From: Octopus sinensis
Taxonomy: Eukaryota
Assembly (NCBI RefSeq): GCF_006345805.1
Contig: NW_021823658.1
Coordinates: 1 to 21,649 of the forward strand
Direction: 5' to 3'
DNA: 21,649 bases
In this document: piece by piece, positions 4,668 to 20,948 of the stretch
How the letters are laid out: each line of letters opens with the position of its first letter
Position numbering within the stretch: the stretch's first letter is position 1
The notes under the pieces: generated by a model
Seen by the model: the letters and a program-made list of their open reading frames with translations, nothing else
Database searches by the model: none
What the model was told of the DNA's origin: nothing
Position numbers and translations under genes: made by a program

Positions 4668-4724
4668 ACACACACACATATATATATATATGTATGTGAA
4701 TATATATATATATATATATATATA

Positions 4725-4853
4725 GTCTATCATATCCACTCAAAAGGCTTTTTGTCGTCCCCAGAATATAGTAGAAGATATTTGCCGGTGCCATGCAGTG
4801 GGACTGAACCTGAAACCATGTGGTTAGGAAGCAAGCTTCTTACCACACAGCCG
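4725..4853 (-). mobile_element. tRNA-derived CORE-type SINE (family B), partial
   Basis: ccactcaaaaggctt...tagtagaagatatttgcc-ggtgccatgcagtgggactgaacc matches 20866-20945 and the reverse complement of 6157-6317; the minus strand has a B-box-like ggttcagtccc. Confidence 0.8.
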
Positions 4854-4938
4854 CGAAAGATATATATATATAACATATGCCCATGTATAACGCATGCCAT
4901 ACTTGATGAAATAGTGTTTGTACTGCCGTTCAAGGTTT

Positions 4939-5017: not shown

Positions 5018-5154
5018 AACTGATCGGTCGTCGACTTCGACGATGATCATTTGGTTGCTCGACTGAAAGCTAGATGGCTGAGTACTCCACAGAAACGAGT
5101 TGCCATAACATAATTCTCAGGCAACATCAGTGTTATGTAATATGTGATAAGGGA

Positions 5155-5386
5155 AGGCGTTGAGCTGGCAGAAAGGTTAGCACACCGGACGAAATGCTTA
5201 GCGGTATTTCGTCCGCCGTTACGTTCTGAGTTCAAATTCCGCCGAGGTCGACTTTGCCTTTCATCCTTTCGGAGTCGATTAAATAAGTACCAGTTACGCA
5301 CTGGGGTCGACCTAATCGACTTAATCCCTTTGTCTGTCCATGTTTGTCCCCTCTATGTTTAGCCTCCCGTGGACAACAAAGAAATA
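5155..5386 (+). mobile_element. Full-length tRNA-derived SINE (family A, tail 1) with 16-bp TSD
   Basis: A-box-like tggcagaaaggttag; B-box-like gagttcaaattcc; central gcctttcatcctttcgg.gtcgat.aa.taagtaccag; tail ending aaagaaata. TSD aatatgtgataaggga at 5139-5154 and 5387-5402. Confidence 0.92.
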
Positions 5387-5516
5387 AATATGTGATAAGG
5401 GAGTTTTCAACAACAGGAAGAATCTAGAAGAAGAGGGGGGGGTGAGATAGAAGGCGGGGTAGGGGAGATACAGTTAGAGGAAAATCGATCCCAAAACTGG
5501 GATTATCTTCTCTTTA

Positions 5517-5887: not shown

Positions 5888-6076
5888 AAGGCGGCGAGCT
5901 GGCAGAAACGTTAGCACACCGGGTGAAATGCTTAGTGGTATTTCGTCCGCCGTCACGTTCTCAGTTCAAATTCTGCCGAGGTCGACTTTGCCTTTCATAA
6001 TTTCGGGTTCGATAAATTAAGTACCAGTTGCGATAAATTAAGTACCGGGCCTTGTGCCAAGAGTAGAAAATAATAT
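5888..6076 (+). mobile_element. Family-A SINE with alternative tail (tail 2), an internal duplication and an 11-bp TSD
   Basis: Same head and core as 5155. cgataaattaagtacc occurs twice, then ggccttgtgccaagagtagaaaa. TSD gtataggattg at 5877-5887 and 6077-6087. Confidence 0.9.
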
Positions 6077-6156: not shown

Positions 6157-6317
6157 AGGTGTGGCTGTCTAGTAAGAAGTTTGCTACCGAACCTCATGAA
6201 TTCAGGTTCAATCCCATTGCGTGGCACCTTGGGCGAGTGTCTTTTACTAAAGCCTTGGGACAGTCAAAGCCTTGTGAGTTGATTTAGTAGATGGAAAATG
6301 TAAGAAGCCTGTCATGG
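6157..6317 (+). mobile_element. CORE-type SINE (family B), partial
   Basis: gtggctgtctagtaag...ggttcaatccc head; CORE-like gcaccttgggcgagtgtctt; aaagccttgtgagt...gaagcctgtc. Confidence 0.8.
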
Positions 6318-6320
6318 ATA

Positions 6321-6353
<33 letters not shown>

Positions 6354-6363
6354 TTGTCGTTCA

Positions 6364-9225: not shown

Positions 9226-9545
9226 CCCCCTAGGATGTACCATATAGTCTACAATATATTCGTGAATACCATTGGTTAATTTAATGACTACAAAATATCA
9301 AACAGACACATCCAAGAATCTTTTCTAGTTTTCTTTTAAATAGGATTGGCATAAAACTAAAATAGGCTAAAAAAAAATATGCCGGAACGAACAGACTTTC
9401 TTCCTGAACGTCAAATTAAAACACTTTACTGTTTTCTCGCCTTTTCGTTTTTGTGTGATTTTAAACCATATAAAATATACGTTCAGTTTGATCCTGCCTG
9501 GCTGAACCGCCTCCTATCTCAGACCCTCATCTTTCCTACTTTCTT

Positions 9546-9758
9546 ATTTCTTCATTGCCCACAAGGGGCTAAATATAGAAGGGACAAACAAGGACAGACA
9601 AACGGATTAAGTCGATTACATCGACCCCAGTGCGTAACTGGTACTTATTTAATCGACCCCGAAAGGATGAAAGGCAAAGTCAACCTCGGCAGAATTTGAA
9701 CTCAGAACGTAACGGCATTTCGCCCGGTGCGCTAACGTTTCTGTCAGCTCGACGCCTT
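9546..9758 (-). mobile_element. Family-A SINE (tail 1) with internal deletion and 15-bp TSD
   Basis: Reverse complement of the 5155-5386 type, with about 25 nt deleted in the head. ctttcctactttctt at 9531-9545 and 9766-9780. Confidence 0.92.
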
Positions 9759-10385: not shown

Positions 10386-10421
<36 letters not shown>

Positions 10422-10646
10422 AGACGAAGACGAAGAAGATGATATTGATGATGATGATGAGGAGGATGATGGTGAGGAGGAGGAGGAGGAGGGATGATAT
10501 GATGATGATGGTGATAATGATAATGATGGTGGATGATGATGATGGTGACGGTGATGATGATGATGATGATGATGATGGTGATGGTGGATGATGATGATGA
10601 TGATGATGATGGTGATGGTGGATGATGATGATGATGATGATGATGG

Positions 10647-10689
<43 letters not shown>

Positions 10690-11760
10690 CCGATCGGTCA
10701 TTAAACAGCAACAACGACACCAATACAGCAATATTGATAATTATGTCGCAATAAAAGATTTACAACAGTTCTGTAATGACACACAGACAGAACGGGGAGA
10801 GGGGAGGGGGGAGGGGAGAGGAGAGAAGTCGGCGGGAGATTGTATATATAATATTGTTTCAGACAGTTTTAATGTTGCTTTAATATAAGAGTTATGGCGG
10901 CGGCGGCGGCGGCGGCGGTGGTGACGACGATGATGAAGACATGACGACGTCGACAACAACGATGATGATGATGACAACGATGATGATGATGATGATGGCA
11001 ACGATGATGATGATGATGATAACGATGATGAGGAGGAGGAGGAGGAGGAGGATCTTTCAAATAGTGAAGATGTTGCTGATATCAATAGCATCATCATTAT
11101 CATCATCATCACCACCAACCACTACCACCATCTTCATCTTCATCATCATCATCATCATTACTAAGACGATTAGGATTTGGATGGTTAGGGTTGGTGAGTG
11201 GGTAGTAGTGGTGGCAGTGGTGGTGGTGGTGGTGGTGGTGGTGGTGGTGGTGGTGGTGGTGGTGGTGGTGGGGTGGTGTTGGGCCAAATAGAAAAAAGAT
11301 AACTCTGATGACAAGGTATCACTAAAACTACAATAAATTCGTCTGACCGCTTCCGTCCCCCATCCCCGCCTCCATTCCCTCGTTCTCCGCCAACCAACTC
11401 CAGCATGACCATCACCACATCAATCACCACCTGCCTTACATCAAAAGCACCACCTCCACTGCCATCGCCCACACCATTCACCATCTGTATCGTCGCCATC
11501 GACACCAACACCGACGACATCGCTGCAGACAATAGCAATAATCATAGCAACAACAACAACAGCACTGGAGTTAGCGCCACCACCACTACCATAGCTACCA
11601 CCATCAACACCACCACCACCACGGCTACCACAATCATCATCACCACCATCATCACCACCATCATCGCTATCACCACCACCACCATCAACACCACCACCAT
11701 CGGTACCACTACCACCACCACCACCACGGCCACCACCACGGCCACCACCACTCCATACTA
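10385..11760. repeat. Compound trinucleotide repeat field: (GAC)n, (GAT)n, (GAG)n, (GGC)n, (CAT)n, (GGT)n, (CAC)n, (CAA)n
   Basis: Direct reading; explains the poly-amino-acid ORFs on both strands. Confidence 0.9.
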
Positions 11761-12850: not shown

Positions 12851-13141
12851 ATAGAATACAGGATCTGTTCCAGAATATGTGACAGTCTGAAAAGAATCAC
12901 AGATATCGAAGCCAATCTGTTCGAATAAACCCTTCAAGGTCGCACTTCAATGACTGAAGCCAGTAAATGATTAAAGGTACTCGTGTATGTTCTTAGCTTA
13001 ATGCTTTGTACTTAATTTTGCTATTCCAAGTATGAAAGCACCCCCCGCTGCATTTCAGTGTGCGCATCGTTAACCAATGTTTTCGTTCTTTCAACAGGTG
13101 GAACCCTGGTGGTAGTTATTATAGGGGAGATAATATATGTA

Positions 13142-13545
13142 CAGGGGTTGGACAAAATAATGGAAACACCTAGCATCATAGCATCATAATTTTGAAATAT
13201 CTATAAAACCGTCAAATGCTTGTTTATTTTTATGTTTTGGGATTTATTATTAGTATTGCTTAATATGTTTTGCTAAAATTCCTCTTTCTTTTCAGATATC
13301 ATCAGAAAAAAGTAATTAGAATTCATTAAAATGACAGATCTATCGGACTTTCAAGGAGGTCAAATTGTTGGTGCTCGTACGGCAAGCGCTAGCGTAACGA
13401 AAACAGCCGAAATGTTTGGTGTATCAAGAAGTACTCTCTCGAAAGTAATGACAGCCCTTGAGAAAGAGGGAAAAAACCTCCTTGTCGAAACAAAACTCAG
13501 GAAGAAAGCCAAATCTTTCAGATAGGGAACCGGAGACTGCTTTAG
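13142..13545 (+). mobile_element. Tc1-family DNA transposon 5' fragment (left TIR plus N-terminal HTH of the transposase)
   Basis: TA at 13140-13141, then caggggttggacaaaataatggaaacacc (Tc1-type TIR). ATG at 13331: MTDLSDFQGGQIVGARTASASVTKTAEMFGVSRSTLSKVMTALEKEGK, frameshift, TSLSKQNSGRKPNLSDR. No DDE domain or right TIR seen. Confidence 0.88.
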
Positions 13546-14104
13546 CTGAAGAATAGACAAAAATTCTTTTGGAAACAATTCAAACTTTGCATGAGTCCAT
13601 ACCTCGTAGAAATGAAGTCACCCTAAAGAGACATCTGTTCGCCATTGGATTATGGAGATGAACGCTTGTACAGCACCAGAACCACTCTCTGGGTCTCCGT
13701 GATAAGTACCATAGGGACAGGCCAAGGGAATATATGACCAGTAACCAGGTGAAACCGCTGCTTTTACATCAGAATATCCCTCTCCTAGGAGGATGCTGTG
13801 ATAACATGCTCGGAGTCCCTCACTCCCGCTGATTTACTGTGCGCCCTGACACCAACTAAGGGTATTTTTGCATCCCCGCACTCAGGTGGTTAACCCATAC
13901 TTGGGACCCAAACAGGTGTTACTGTTCTGGATCAGATTAGAACTTGGTACGATAGGGGCTAAGAGATGGTTTCACGCTTCCCAAAATCTTGGACTTCCGA
14001 ACCAGAGCCCCTCTACCGGATGCACTTTAAAATCGTATCCAAGACATACATATGTATGCTTGTTTGTATGTATACATGTATGGATGTATATGTGTGTAGA
14101 TACA

Positions 14105-15186: not shown

Positions 15187-15789
15187 GCAAATTCTTCCAC
15201 TTCTAGAATTTCTCTTCGCCGTGTTCTTTCTCTAATTAAAGCAAATTCTAAATCAGTTTGATATTTCAGATTTGTTCCAAATCAACCTTTTGTCCTTCAC
15301 CAAACTCGAGTCCGTTTCTTCAGCTCCAACTTTCTTCTGGAATGTCTTCTCACACTTTGGATATATGGTTCTTGAATCATCAGACAAAAAAGTAAGAGAC
15401 CAAACTTTCCTTTGTAATCACTGATGAATTCGTTATTTTTACCAAATAATCCAGAGAAATGATGTTGAGGATTTTTTGTTAGTCTCACACATTTGTGGAT
15501 TTTGATGTTTGAAGAACGATCGAGTTTGGCAGTTTGCTGTGATCAAGGCTCGATCTCTGCATTCAAATCTGGTCTTCAACAATTATTGTATCTCACTCAA
15601 ATTGATTTGTGATCGAGATAATTTCCTTCACGTAAATCGACCAGAAAGTGCTTGTTTACGACTCCGAGCTGATGTGTGTGTGTGTGTACGTGTGTGTGTG
15701 TGTGTGCAGACAAGGTATATTACTGCGTGTACAGAAATAAATATGTATATATGTTTGTTTACGACTCCGAACTGATGTGTGTGTGTGTG

Positions 15790-15906
15790 TGTGTTTGTGT
15801 CTCTGTGACCCACCACCGCTTCACAACCCGTGTTGGTGTGTTTACGCACCCATAACATAGCTGTTCGGCGACAGACACCGATAGAATAAGTACCAGACTT
15901 TAAAAA
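15790..15906 (+). mobile_element. 3' portion of family-B SINE
   Basis: ccaccaccgcttcacaacccgtgttggtgtgtttacg..ccataac..agc.gttcggc....agaccgatagaataagtaccag is the reverse complement of 20710-20790. Confidence 0.75.
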
Positions 15907-16728: not shown

Positions 16729-16760
16729 CATGCACTCACACACACACACACATACATAGA

Positions 16761-16792
<32 letters not shown>

Positions 16793-17047
16793 CATACACA
16801 CAAACACACAAAAATACATACATACACACACACACACAATACATGCATACATATATACACACATATACACACGCAAACGCACACACACACACACACATAC
16901 ATACATACATACATACATACATACATACATACATACATACATACATACATACATACATACACACACACATACATACATACGTACATACACACATACATAC
17001 ATACATACATACATACATACATACATACATACATACATACATACATA
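16690..17047. repeat. (CT)n, (CA)n and (ATAC)n compound microsatellite
   Basis: Direct reading. Confidence 0.92.
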
Positions 17048-17252
17048 GGATCGAGGTGTAGGAAAAAAGTTAGCTTCGAGTAATCCGTAGTAAATATAAA
17101 AAAACAACTTTTCGGGGCCAGTAGTGGTTTATTGAGACGGAAGGTTGCGGACCATTTTTCTTTATCGGAGAACGATGAGCTGAAAAAAGTTCTTTTTATA
17201 TTCCCCGGTAGGTGACGAGGGTTGAAGAGTTTGCGAAAAAGAATACAAGAGT

Positions 17253-17573
17253 TATGGAATGGAATATGGGAAATCCGGACTACGTATGTTCGATAGCGAG
17301 TGGAACCTCAGAAGTGGTAAAAATCCGAGTGAGGATTCGATTAAAGGCTATATTGTCACATGGAGATACATGTTAACTCAAAGAGGATTCGGTCAGAATA
17401 TCGTCTTTGTGTTAACATGTACCTCTTTGCAACAATGTAGCCTTTAATCGAATCAAAATATCCTTGGCCTGAAGAGAAGCCGGCAGGATACACCTCGCTT
17501 GGATATTTACCACTTCAGAGGTTCCACTCGCTATGAAACATATTTAGCCTGGATTTCCCATACTCCATTCCGT
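17253..17573. repeat. Long imperfect inverted repeat (fold-back hairpin)
   Basis: 17253-17333 pairs with 17494-17573, and 17334-17390 pairs with 17396-17454. Loop of about 5 nt; 39-nt insert 17455-17493 on the right arm; 20 substitutions and one 1-nt indel between arms. Confidence 0.95.
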
Positions 17574-18595
17574 ATACATATCAGTCTCGCTATGCCCTGT
17601 AAAAGAACTGGGAAGGTTGGACCTCCAGCCAGGCCTTTCACGATAATCTTCGTGCTGGAAACTTTCTAACACCCCCGTCGTGTGTAGATAGCTTAAAATC
17701 TATTTGTTGATGTGCAACATCGCCGCACAAATGGAACAAAATTAATCTCAGAATTAGAAGCAGATTTAATTACCTAAACATTTGCAAGGTCACACGCTCT
17801 GTGTATGTTTTTTTAAGGCGCTTATTGGCGGAAAGTAATACATGTTTGGGGTTTTAATGATTAAAACAACTGGGTTTTTTTTAATGAAATTTGTGGTGTA
17901 TATATGGATGTATATACGTATCTATGTAGGTATATAGGTTATATAGATATGTTTATATGTATGTACAAATGAATGTACGTATGTGTAGGTATGTATGAAT
18001 GAATATATATATATATGTACGTATGCATGTAAGTATGAATGTATGTATGTATTTACATACGTACGCATGTATGTATGTGCACATGCATGGATGTATGTAT
18101 GTGTGTAGGTAGGTAGGTAGGTAGGTAGGGGGTAGGTAGGTGGGTACCTACGTATGCATGTATGTATGCTTTCGTAGATGTATGTATGTTTCCATGTCGT
18201 GAGTTTTACGAAGCCATGGAAGAGATGGAGTTTTAGAGGAGAAAATGAGTTTAGTGAGAGAGAGAGAGAGAGAGAGACATGAGTGTGAGGGAGAGGGAGA
18301 AGATAGAAATAGAGAGAGAGAGAGAGAGGGAGGACGTAGAGATGGAGAGAGGGCGAGAGAAAGTGGGGGAAAAGATGCGTGTTTAGAAAGAATTACCTTG
18401 ACTGTCAAGTCAGGTGTGGACTGCATTTATTAATTAACACAAAAGGAAGGTGTGAAACAGTGAGTCACTGCGTATTGTAGTGAAGGTGGCAGTGGTGGGG
18501 GGGGGGGAGTATTTTCTCAATATTCTTTCAAGGTATATTTATATGTACATCACACACACATAAGGTTGTGTGTGGGGCGGTGTTTCTGTTTGTGT

Positions 18596-18785: not shown

Positions 18786-18815
18786 CCTGGAACCATGTGG
18801 TTGGGAAGCAAGCTT
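18786..18815 (-). mobile_element. 30-nt family-B SINE head fragment
   Basis: ggaaccatgtggttgggaagcaagctt is nearly identical to 4812-4839. Confidence 0.7.
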
Positions 18816-18840
18816 ATATATATATATATCACAAATATAT

Positions 18841-18875
<35 letters not shown>

Positions 18876-18952
18876 CACAAATATATATATATATATAATA
18901 AATATATATAATATATATATATATATCACAAATATATAATATATATATATCA

Positions 18953-18988
<36 letters not shown>

Positions 18989-19026
18989 CACAATATATAT
19001 ATTATATATATATATATATATCACAA

Positions 19027-19057
<31 letters not shown>

Positions 19058-19094
19058 ATATATATATATCACAAATATATATTATATATATCAC

Positions 19095-19128
<34 letters not shown>

Positions 19129-19170
19129 ATATATATATCACAAATATATATATATATATATATATATATC

Positions 19171-19204
<34 letters not shown>

Positions 19205-19206
19205 AA

Positions 19207-19237
<31 letters not shown>

Positions 19238-19282
19238 CACAAATATATATATATATATATATATATATCACAAATATATATA

Positions 19283-19316
<34 letters not shown>

Positions 19317-19347
19317 CTTATATATATCTATATATATAATATATATC

Positions 19348-19387
<40 letters not shown>

Positions 19388-19417
19388 ATGTATGTATGTA
19401 TGTATGTATATGTACAT

Positions 19418-19451
<34 letters not shown>

Positions 19452-19452
19452 A
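18816..19452. repeat. (TA)n array punctuated by TCACAA(A) (higher-order minisatellite)
   Basis: About 14 TCACAA(A)-like punctuations between 18829 and 19351. Confidence 0.9.
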
Positions 19453-19963: not shown

Positions 19964-20173
19964 TTGGCTTCAAATTTTAGCACAGGGCCGGCAATTATGG
20001 GGCGGGGAGGGGGTAGTCGGTTATATCGACCTCCAGCATTCAGCTGGTACTTATTTTCTCGACTACGAAAGAAGGAAAGACAAAATCGACCCCGTCGGCA
20101 GTTGAACTCGGATGGGATAGTCGGAAGGAATATCGCTAAGAATCTTTTGCGGCGCGGTAACGATTCTGCCACC
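19964..20173 (-). mobile_element. Diverged family-A SINE with tail 2
   Basis: ttggcttcaaattttagcacagggccggcaat (tail), ctggtacttatttt.tcgac...aaag (core), ggtaacgattctgcca (head). Confidence 0.75.
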
Positions 20174-20600
20174 AACAATATCAAAATTGAGTAAATTGGC
20201 GGCACATAGGAGGAGCATGTAGATGTTCAGGGGAGCGACTAATCTACAAAATTATACAAGAAGGAACTTTAAAGAATCGTTGGAACTCGTCGATTGGTCT
20301 AAATATGGAATGTGCATTTTGGACGAGAAGACGAGGAAAACTGATGTCCTGTTTCCCGAATCTTAACATGAACGGCTTAACAAAGCAACCTCTAGATTCG
20401 GGTTCAGAACAACCTTTATCTTAACAGAAAGTATGATAGACCCTTTAATAAGGGGAGGACAAGAAATGAATATCTAAAGAGAGGAAAGAAAATATGATTA
20501 TCAAAACTCTCAGTTATCCATTACATCACATTTCTGGGTTTATTCTGAGGTCATCAGTTCTTATTGGGAATTGATCAGAAACTTATCAATGTTCATCTTT

Positions 20601-20948
20601 TATCTCTTATCATTTACTTGTTGCAATCATTAGACTGCGCCCATGCTGGGACACCGACTTGAAGAATTTTAAGTCCAATGTATCAACCGCAGGGCTTATA
20701 TTTTAAAACCTGGTACTTGTTCTATAGGTCTCTTTTGCGAACCTCTAAATTATGGGGACATAAATACATCAACACCGGTTGTCAAGCACAGTGGGGACAA
20801 AGATACACACAAAGCCACGCACTTATATATATACGACGGGCTTCCTTCAGTTTCCGCCTACCAAATCCACTCAGAAGGCTTTGGTCCGTCCGAGGCTATA
20901 GTAGAAGACACTTGCCCAAGGTGCCACGCAGTGGGACTGAACCCGGAG
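20601..20948 (-). mobile_element. Family-B CORE-type SINE, near full length, lacking the extreme 5' head
   Basis: gacgggcttccttcagtttccgcctaccaaatccactcagaaggctttggtccgtccgaggctatagtagaagacacttgcccaaggtgccacgcagtgggactgaacccgg plus a long tail. Confidence 0.85.

What the first reader, a model, noticed from the sequence alone, without database searches (positions are those of the whole stretch)
17253..17573. 321-nt fold-back hairpin with a three-way junction: candidate hpRNA/endo-siRNA or ADAR substrate, or a foldback-element core
Seen, paired by hand: the outer stem has 82 positions with 69 Watson-Crick pairs, 5 G-U, 7 mismatches and 1 bulge. The inner stem is about 55 bp and opens with 16 perfect pairs (attcgattaaaggcta/tagcctttaatcgaat), closing on a loop of about 5 nt. 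The right arm carries 39 extra nt (17455-17493) that fold on their own (tatcct-tggc...gccg-gc-aggata). The sequence matches none of the SINE families here and lies about 200 bp from an (ATAC)n array. G-U versus A-C counts on the plus strand are 7 versus 6, so there is no strand bias to show RNA-level selection. Inference, alternatives: (i) a Drosophila-hpRNA-like silencing locus, (ii) an editing substrate, since A-C mismatches are favoured ADAR sites, (iii) the core of a foldback/MITE/Helentron-type element or a viral terminal hairpin, (iv) an old neutral fold-back duplication. Near-zero-loop palindromes are unstable, so persistence to about 15% arm divergence is itself notable.
Basis: partly seen in the sequence, partly recalled or inferred. 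Interest (0 to 1): 0.7.

Follow-up and report, generated by a model that had tools for sequence, protein, structure and literature searches.

The report
Decayed palindromic DNA repeat in octopus
The 322-base fold-back is real, but it looks like an ordinary decaying palindromic piece of DNA in an octopus-type genome, most likely a dead miniature transposon, and nothing suggests a selected RNA gene.

Summary
Window 17253-17574 is a 322-nt imperfect palindrome. It forms 137 predicted pairs, with RNA MFE -196 (+) and -191 (-) kcal/mol and z about -24 and -21. The right arm carries 39 extra nt (17455-17493). It is the only non-microsatellite fold-back in the window.

Nothing indicates RNA-level selection:
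- Both strands fold equally well.
- G·U versus A·C counts are 7 versus 6.
- 9 of 20 arm differences sit at CpG, including 5 of the 7 G·U pairs. That is the pattern of neutral DNA decay.
- Rfam gives no match, and no ORF has a homologue.

Inverted homology stops abruptly at both ends. The flanks are unrelated in either orientation. The ancestral palindrome ends exactly in TA...TA, the target-site signature of Tc1/mariner elements, which are the dominant DNA transposons in Octopus vulgaris.

My best reading is a relic of a palindromic MITE-like element (about 0.5). The main rival is an old in-situ inverted duplication (about 0.25).

The decisive test is copy number and orthologous empty sites. 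I could not run it because no cephalopod genome collection was available.

Published surveys report no evident endo-siRNA pathway in molluscs, so the hpRNA reading is disfavoured. If the locus is transcribed, it would be a passive ADAR hyper-editing substrate like many other octopus loci. Interest is low.

The parts
17253..17574 (.). Whole imperfect palindrome (322 bp), including the terminal TA dinucleotides
   Evidence: Self-inverse blastn match 17253-17574. Folds.
17253..17254 (.). Left TA: candidate target-site duplication, or the last two paired bases of the palindrome
   Evidence: Sequence. TA frequency in non-repeat parts of the window is 0.070.
17573..17574 (.). Right TA: candidate target-site duplication
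   Evidence: Sequence. The next bases outward, 17252 T and 17575 T, do not pair.
17255..17390 (+). Left arm (candidate left terminal inverted repeat), starting TGGAATGGAATATGGGAAATCC
   Evidence: Alignment of the left arm to the reverse complement of the right arm gives 125 matches and 21 mismatches. Helices are listed.
17391..17395 (.). Apical loop, 5 nt (GGTCA)
   Evidence: MFE structure
17396..17572 (-). Right arm (candidate right terminal inverted repeat). Its outer end reads CGGAATGGAGTATGGGAAATCC on the - strand.
17455..17493 (+). 39 nt present only in the right arm: an insertion here or a deletion from the left arm. It forms a weak 12-bp side hairpin.
   Evidence: Gap in the arm alignment. 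Fold of -9.8 kcal/mol, z -2.1. No target-site duplication is visible around it.

Best explanation
The locus is a relic of a small, non-coding, wholly palindromic DNA transposon: a MITE-like, non-autonomous terminal-inverted-repeat element of the TA-targeting (Tc1/mariner-type) kind.

Inferred mechanism: a transposase supplied in trans by an autonomous relative bound the two arms. It cut the element out and pasted it into a TA dinucleotide, which was duplicated on either side. The copy has since decayed neutrally, with about 15% difference between arms, CpG-biased changes and one 39-nt indel, and it is now immobile. It has no selected RNA function. If it lies in a transcribed region, its RNA would fold into a duplex of about 137 bp and be hyper-edited by ADAR as a by-product.

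Shown here: the palindrome, its sharp ends, the TA ends, the lack of coding capacity, and the neutral, strand-symmetric substitution pattern.

Inferred, not shown: mobility, family membership (copy number) and the transposase superfamily.
For: - Homology between the arms drops from 85-86% to random exactly at 17253 and 17574. The flanks 17048-17252 and 17575-17896 are unrelated in either orientation; the local alignment score equals the shuffle mean.
- The differing third position (T at 17255 versus C on the other arm) is a CpG-to-TpG change. The ancestral palindrome therefore read TACGGAATGG...CCATTCCGTA and ended in TA on both sides. TA frequency is 0.07, so this end is about 14 times likelier under a TA-targeting element than under arbitrary ends (my inference).
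- The element is 322 bp. Its ORFs are at most 62 aa and have no convincing homologue or Pfam family.
- 13 of 20 arm differences are transitions. 9 of 20 lie at CpG, although the arms hold only 4-6 CpGs each. G·U versus A·C is 7 versus 6, and both strands fold equally well.
- In Octopus vulgaris, Tc1-Mariner elements make up 119 Mb of the 190 Mb of TIR transposon DNA, and a further 15% of the genome is unclassified repeat (PMC13282606 supplement). The window is repeat-rich octopod DNA: its SINEs are 84-89% identical to a copy in an O. vulgaris locus, and it holds a Tc1-like fragment.
- A precedent exists in the roughly 200-bp palindromic Harbinger repeat of Xenopus, which folds on itself (PMC5625713).
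Against: - No second copy was seen in the window, in a 20-kb O. vulgaris locus, or in the viral, metagenome and prokaryote collections. None of these has power for a family of hundreds to thousands of copies in a genome of about 2.8 Gb, so multi-copy status, the defining feature, is untested.
- TA is self-complementary, so it cannot be told apart from two more bases of palindrome.
- The termini (YGGAATGG) do not resemble the commonest Tc1/mariner ends (CAGT or TTAGG types, from my own knowledge).
- The Tc1-like fragment at about 13.1-13.6 kb has unrelated ends.
Confidence: 0.5

Rival explanations
1. An old, single-copy, in-situ inverted duplication. A fold-back or template switch during replication or break repair copied about 160 bp of local sequence in reverse next to the original. 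Both arms have since drifted neutrally by about 8% each.
For: - A sharp outer boundary and a tiny spacer are also expected from this mechanism.
- No other copy was found anywhere searched.
- The decay pattern is neutral and CpG-driven.
- Short motifs from the apex recur at the junction of the outer and inner stems: GAGGATTCG at 17331 and 17383, and TCARAATATC at 17393 and 17453. This could reflect local template switching.
Against: - The palindrome ending exactly in TA has only about a 7% prior under arbitrary ends.
- The number of short direct repeats is what shuffles give: 1 observed against 1.07 expected.
- A perfect 160-bp palindrome with a 5-nt spacer would have had to survive its unstable early phase (established knowledge of palindrome instability).
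Confidence: 0.25
2. Two members of an unrecognised short interspersed repeat of about 140-180 bp that inserted head-to-head by chance or by target preference. The '86% arm identity' would then be ordinary between-copy divergence.
For: Arm identity of 85-86% falls in the same range as identities between SINE copies in this window and in L001, which are 72-89%.
Against: - Both the outer and inner ends of the two arms coincide to the base, with only a 5-nt gap.
- There is no tail, no A/B box and no tRNA-like part.
- No single-arm copy occurs in 42 kb of octopod DNA, where true SINEs recur many times.
Confidence: 0.07
3. A selected RNA hairpin gene, whatever its DNA origin: an hpRNA/endo-siRNA or miRNA-like precursor, or a dedicated ADAR-binding RNA.
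For: - The duplex is very stable, with 137 bp in total (129 WC, 8 G·U) and an inner stem that opens with 17 perfect pairs.
- Octopus nervous tissue shows exceptionally high hyper-editing of long dsRNA (PMC5625713).
Against: - There is no strand asymmetry: 7 G·U versus 6 A·C, and -196 versus -191 kcal/mol.
- 5 of the 7 G·U pairs are CpG decay products.
- No Rfam family matches; the best is mir-513 at 17.5 bits against a gathering score of 72.
- No evidence of an endo-siRNA pathway was found in molluscs, including O. bimaculoides (PMC12479628).
- The arm ORF has no homologue that could be a target.
- The stem is far longer than a canonical pre-miRNA.
Confidence: 0.05
4. A terminal hairpin of an integrated virus (parvovirus/densovirus-like) or of a Helentron or Foldback element.
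For: Only the general shape: a long hairpin with a side arm.
Against: - No viral or transposase ORF lies next to it. The flanks are 205 and 322 bp of unique non-coding DNA, then microsatellites.
- Three conserved blocks of the arms gave no exact match in IMG/VR.
- The arms have no tandem sub-repeats, and there is no 9-bp duplication (4 of 9 bases match), as Foldback elements would show (sequence).
- The arms are about ten times longer than Helentron subterminal repeats (my own knowledge).
Confidence: 0.02

Closest known systems
Palindromic MITEs, e.g. the roughly 200-bp Harbinger-derived palindromic repeat of Xenopus tropicalis (PMC5625713) and Stowaway/Tc1-mariner-type MITEs
   Same: Small (322 bp) and non-coding. 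The two arms meet in the middle, so the whole element folds back on itself with a very short loop. TA sits at both ends, as in Tc1/mariner-type MITEs. Its RNA would be a tight duplex.
   Different: Copy number, a parent transposon and empty sites are not shown. The terminal sequence (YGGAATGG) matches no element I could compare it with. Harbinger MITEs have TWA duplications, which are not present here.
Drosophila hpRNA loci (hpRNA1, hp-CG4068 and similar)
   Same: A long inverted repeat able to form a duplex of more than 100 bp in one transcript.
   Different: No target homology was found and there is no strand-specific conservation. The host clade has no evident endo-siRNA pathway (PMC12479628). 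Transcription is unknown.
Drosophila Foldback (FB) elements
   Same: Long inverted arms that make up nearly the whole element.
   Different: FB arms are kilobase-scale and built of tandem sub-repeats, with 9-bp duplications. This locus has 140-180-bp arms, no sub-repeats and no 9-bp duplication.
Spontaneous inverted (fold-back) duplications from template switching
   Same: A near-zero spacer, sharp ends and a single locus as far as could be seen.
   Different: The TA ends are unexpected under this origin (about 7%). No single-arm ancestral state could be examined.

Membership tests
MITE (Tc1/mariner-type, TA-targeting) | Terminal inverted repeats | tested here: met
   Arms have 125 matches and 21 mismatches in the gapped alignment, or 113 of 133 ungapped. 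Homology ends sharply at 17253 and 17574.
MITE (Tc1/mariner-type, TA-targeting) | Small size and no coding capacity | tested here: met
   322 bp. ORFs are at most 62 aa with no convincing homologue or Pfam family.
MITE (Tc1/mariner-type, TA-targeting) | TA target-site duplication | tested here: inconclusive
   TA is present on both sides (17253-54 and 17573-74). Because TA is self-complementary, it could equally be part of the palindrome. TA frequency is 0.07.
MITE (Tc1/mariner-type, TA-targeting) | Many dispersed copies in the genome | not testable with these tools
   No cephalopod genome collection was available. There were 0 extra copies in the 21.6-kb window and in 20 kb of O. vulgaris. 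The protein database has almost no power here: a control search with a high-copy SINE ORF returned 1 hit.
MITE (Tc1/mariner-type, TA-targeting) | Autonomous relative with the same termini | not tested
   The only candidate in reach, the Tc1-like fragment at about 13.1-13.6 kb, shares no similarity with the hairpin.
hpRNA / endo-siRNA locus | Arm homologous to a target gene | tested here: inconclusive
   The 62-aa arm ORF has no convincing homologue among 5.8 billion or 1.84 billion proteins. The six weak matches (E 1e-5 to 7e-4) are short, multi-stretch hits to long proteins. Only one reading frame was searched, and non-coding targets were not searched.
hpRNA / endo-siRNA locus | Strand-specific conservation of pairing (excess of G·U over A·C on the transcribed strand) | tested here: not met
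   7 G·U versus 6 A·C. 5 of the 7 G·U pairs are CpG decay products. MFE is -196 versus -191 kcal/mol.
hpRNA / endo-siRNA locus | Dicer-dependent 21-22-nt small RNAs from the stem | not testable with these tools
   No read data were available. [quoted passage not shown]
Known RNA families (Rfam 15: miRNA precursors, ribozymes and others) | Score at or above the family gathering threshold | tested here: not met
   No match at gathering thresholds. The best match inside the hairpin at E up to 10 is mir-513 at 17.5 bits against 72.1.
Foldback (FB) elements | Arms built of tandem sub-repeats, with a 9-bp duplication | tested here: not met
   No internal tandem or direct-repeat structure beyond chance. 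The flanking 9-mers match at 4 of 9 bases (sequence).
Integrated parvovirus/densovirus-type terminal hairpin | Adjacency to viral replication or capsid genes | tested here: not met
   No protein-like ORFs in the flanks. No exact match in IMG/VR for three conserved blocks.
ADAR hyper-editing substrate (passive) | Long, near-perfect intramolecular duplex | tested here: met
   137 pairs, of which 129 are Watson-Crick and 8 are G·U.
ADAR hyper-editing substrate (passive) | Transcription and clustered A-to-G changes in RNA reads | not testable with these tools

The most novel reading that the evidence does not exclude
The hairpin is a transcribed, lineage-specific dsRNA gene in octopus that is kept for its structure. 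It might act as a dedicated ADAR-binding or hyper-editing hub in neurons, or as a Dicer substrate in a clade thought to lack endo-siRNAs. It would have been recruited from a palindromic transposon.
Probability: 0.04. Interest if true: 0.6.

Novelty: new member of a known kind. Interest (0 to 1): 0.14.

Why it matters
It matters little on its own. Octopus genomes are about two-thirds repeats and are unusually rich in loci that can form long dsRNA. This locus is one plain example of how such structures arise, as a self-complementary repeat. If it proves to belong to a multi-copy family, that family would be a useful entry for cephalopod repeat libraries, where 15% of the O. vulgaris genome is still 'unknown' repeat. 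It would also be a candidate contributor to the heavy non-coding hyper-editing seen in octopus nervous tissue.

Tried and rejected
- **Larger palindrome.** I tested whether the hairpin is the core of a larger palindrome reaching the oppositely oriented (ACAT)n and (TGTA)n arrays. The flanks between them show no homology in either orientation, so I rejected this.
- **Protein route to relatives.**
  - The 62-aa ORF across the left arm gave no hit in the word-indexed search.
  - The exhaustive HMMER search gave only six weak multi-stretch matches to long proteins, which I took as noise.
  - A control with a high-copy SINE ORF returned a single O. vulgaris protein. These databases therefore cannot see octopus non-coding repeats, and the negative result carries little weight.
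- **Exact look-ups.** Three window ORFs were looked up to find the source contig or independent assemblies. None is on record.
- **Pattern scans.** Conserved blocks of the arms found nothing in viral contigs (three patterns), metagenome contigs (two patterns) or prokaryote genome contigs (one pattern).
- **Literature string search.** Searching for arm 12-15-mers gave only chance matches to primers.
- **Sampling more octopus DNA.** I considered using the last protein search and the remaining look-ups for this. It would give at most about 200 kb of a 2.8-Gb genome, roughly a 7% chance of meeting a 1,000-copy family, so I did not spend the shared compute.
- **Hammerhead-like motif.** CUGAAGA in the 39-nt insert has no helix II or GAAA partner and no Rfam ribozyme match, so I rejected it.
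- **Nested or recursive origin.** The repeated apex motifs could suggest this, but the number of such repeats equals the chance expectation. I left it as an unexplained detail.
- **Other target-site duplications.** I checked for duplications of 3, 4 (TTAA), 8 and 9 bp by eye from the sequence. None is present.

Full report
**Observation.** The fold-back is real.
- Window 17253-17574 matches its own reverse complement and nothing else in the window.
- As RNA, the + strand folds to -195.2 kcal/mol for 17253-17573 (z -24.4) and -196.3 for 17253-17574. The - strand folds to -190.9 (z -21.4). As DNA it folds to -109.5 (z -17.4). No shuffle came close.
- The minimum-energy structure has 137 pairs (129 Watson-Crick, 8 G·U) and a 5-nt loop at 17391-17395.
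The outer stem has 81 ungapped positions with 69 Watson-Crick pairs, 5 G·U and 7 mismatches. Across both stems G·U versus A·C is 7 versus 6. The inner stem opens with 17 perfect pairs.
- The right arm has 39 extra nucleotides at 17455-17493. Their own hairpin, which creates the 'three-way junction', is marginal: -9.8 kcal/mol, z -2.1, and 6 of 200 shuffles fold as well.

**Context.** The window is non-coding, repeat-rich DNA of an octopus-type genome.
- It has many (ACAT)n, (CA)n, (GA)n and trinucleotide arrays.
- Its tRNA-derived SINE copies are 84-89% identical to a SINE copy in an Octopus vulgaris chromosome locus.
- A Tc1-like transposase N-terminal fragment lies at 13316-13522, with only weak helix-turn-helix matches.
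- No ORF in the window has a convincing protein family.
- No tRNA gene and no Rfam family is present.
- The hairpin sits in 849 bp of unique sequence between an (ACAT)n array ending at 17047 and a degenerate (TGTA)n array starting at 17897.

**Ends.** Identity between the arms is 86% in the gapped alignment (125 matches, 21 mismatches) and 85% over 133 ungapped positions.
- Outside 17253 and 17574 it falls at once to random. The left flank and the right flank give alignment scores equal to the shuffle mean in both orientations. This is therefore a discrete 322-bp unit, not the centre of a larger palindrome.
- The outermost paired bases are TA on both sides.
- The third position differs between the arms (T versus C) in a CpG context. 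The ancestral ends therefore read TACGGAATGG...CCATTCCGTA.
- TA makes up 7.0% of dinucleotides in the non-repeat parts of the window. A palindrome ending exactly in TA is thus about fourteen times likelier if a TA-targeting transposon made it than if the ends are arbitrary. That ratio is my inference. Because TA is self-complementary, the duplication cannot be proved.
- Duplications of 3, 4, 8 or 9 bp are absent (sequence).

**Substitution pattern.**
- Of 20 differences between the arms, 13 are transitions.
- 9 lie in a CpG of one arm, although each arm holds only 4-6 CpGs in 133 positions.
- 5 of the 7 G·U 'wobbles' are such CpG decay products.
- The counts are symmetric between strands (7 versus 6), and the two strands fold equally well.
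- This is what neutral decay of double-stranded DNA gives. It is not what selection on one RNA strand gives.
- The Jukes-Cantor distance between arms is 0.17, or about 0.08 per arm if they were once identical. That is close to the younger of the two transposon expansion waves reported for O. bimaculoides, at 0.09 (cited in PMC13282606). This is suggestive only.

**Search for relatives.** No tool here holds cephalopod genomes, so the key test, copy number and orthologous sites, could not be made.
- Exact-pattern scans of conserved arm blocks found nothing in viral contigs (three patterns), metagenome contigs (two patterns) or prokaryote genome contigs (one pattern).
- The arm ORF found nothing believable among proteins.
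- A control with an ORF from a very abundant SINE found only one annotated O. vulgaris protein. That route has almost no power.
- The hairpin and its termini are absent from the one 20-kb O. vulgaris locus I could fetch.
- Exact look-ups of three window ORFs, made to find the source contig, failed.

**Literature.**
[quoted passage not shown] This weighs against a Drosophila-style hpRNA.
- Octopus shows an exceptionally strong hyper-editing signal. It also has an exceptionally high fraction of loci able to form long near-perfect dsRNA, 4.4e-3 of random 50-mers.
- In the frog, the other extreme species, the most edited repeat is a roughly 200-bp palindromic Harbinger element that folds on itself (PMC5625713).
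- At that frequency, about 95 bp of such structure is expected per 21.6-kb window. One 322-bp hairpin in this window is therefore unremarkable. This is my rough inference, since the definitions differ.
- In O. vulgaris about 66% of the genome is repeats. Tc1-Mariner elements are 119 Mb of the 190 Mb of TIR transposons, and 15% of the genome is unclassified repeat (PMC13282606).

**Interpretation.** The best-supported reading (about 0.5) is a dead, wholly palindromic, non-autonomous TIR element of the TA-targeting kind, that is, a MITE-like relic.
- Supporting features: small and non-coding, with arms that meet in the middle, sharp ends, TA on both sides, neutral decay, and a host genome where Tc1/mariner-type DNA dominates.
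- The main rival (about 0.25) is an old single-copy inverted duplication made in place by template switching. It explains everything except the TA ends.
- Short motifs from the apex recur at the junction of the outer and inner stems: GAGGATTCG at 17331 and 17383, and TCARAATATC at 17393 and 17453. This hints at local copying, but the number of such repeats equals chance.
- Minor rivals are two head-to-head copies of an unknown short repeat (about 0.07), a selected RNA hairpin (about 0.05), and a viral, Helentron or Foldback terminus (about 0.02). Each of the last three fails a defining feature tested here.
- An assembly artefact is unlikely, because artefactual fold-backs have near-identical arms.
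- Whatever its origin, the sequence would be a passive ADAR substrate if transcribed. That is a property, not a demonstrated function.

**Verdict.** I file the locus as a probable new member of a known kind, a palindromic MITE-like repeat, with family membership unproven because copy number could not be tested. Interest is low.

Noticed in passing
window 16738-17047 and 17897-18189: All seven sizeable tetranucleotide arrays in the window read (ACAT)n on the + strand. The one exception is the degenerate (TGTA)n array just downstream of the hairpin. The two arrays flanking the hairpin are 78% complementary over 144 nt. In one transcript they could form a second, long-range duplex enclosing the hairpin. 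The unique DNA between them is not inverted-homologous.
   Followed up: partly
window 17331-17339 / 17383-17391 and 17393-17402 / 17453-17462: The motif at the hairpin apex (GAGGATTCG..TCAGAATATC) recurs at the outer/inner stem junction, split across it. The second half starts the 39-nt extra segment. The number of such repeats is at chance level, but their positions are curious. This may be a trace of template switching.
   Followed up: partly
L001 1556-2458 and 4681-5581 (O. vulgaris OX597819.1): A 906-bp inverted repeat at 98.9% identity, with arms 2.2 kb apart. It is either a young long-TIR element or a recent inverted duplication. A small 62-bp palindrome also lies at 20221-20282.
   Followed up: no
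window ~13140-13640: Fragment of a Tc1-like transposon. It has a TIR-like start (TACAGGGGTTGGACAAAATAATGGAAACACC) and a 69-aa stop-to-stop frame (13316-13522) holding a 64-aa ATG-started ORF, with only weak helix-turn-helix matches. It is truncated and unrelated to the hairpin.
   Followed up: partly
window 5154-5394, 5888-6032, 9543-9758 (-), 20015-20171 (-); second family at 4699-4855, 6157-6357, 15775-15893, 20601-20947: Several copies of at least two short interspersed repeat families shared with O. vulgaris at 72-89% identity. One O. vulgaris copy is annotated as a 116-aa 'hypothetical predicted protein' (P0001), which is probably a spurious gene model over a SINE.
   Followed up: partly
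window 18815-19452: A 640-bp (TA)n array interrupted many times by the motif CACAAA. This suggests a higher-order repeat rather than a pure dinucleotide array.
   Followed up: no
window 10387-11751: A 1.4-kb block of trinucleotide arrays, (GAC)n, (GAT)n, (GTG)n and (CCA)n, gives long low-complexity ORFs on both strands. No evidence of a real gene was found. The window length of 21,649 would fit a 1,649-bp gene model with 10-kb flanks, but I could not confirm one.
   Followed up: partly
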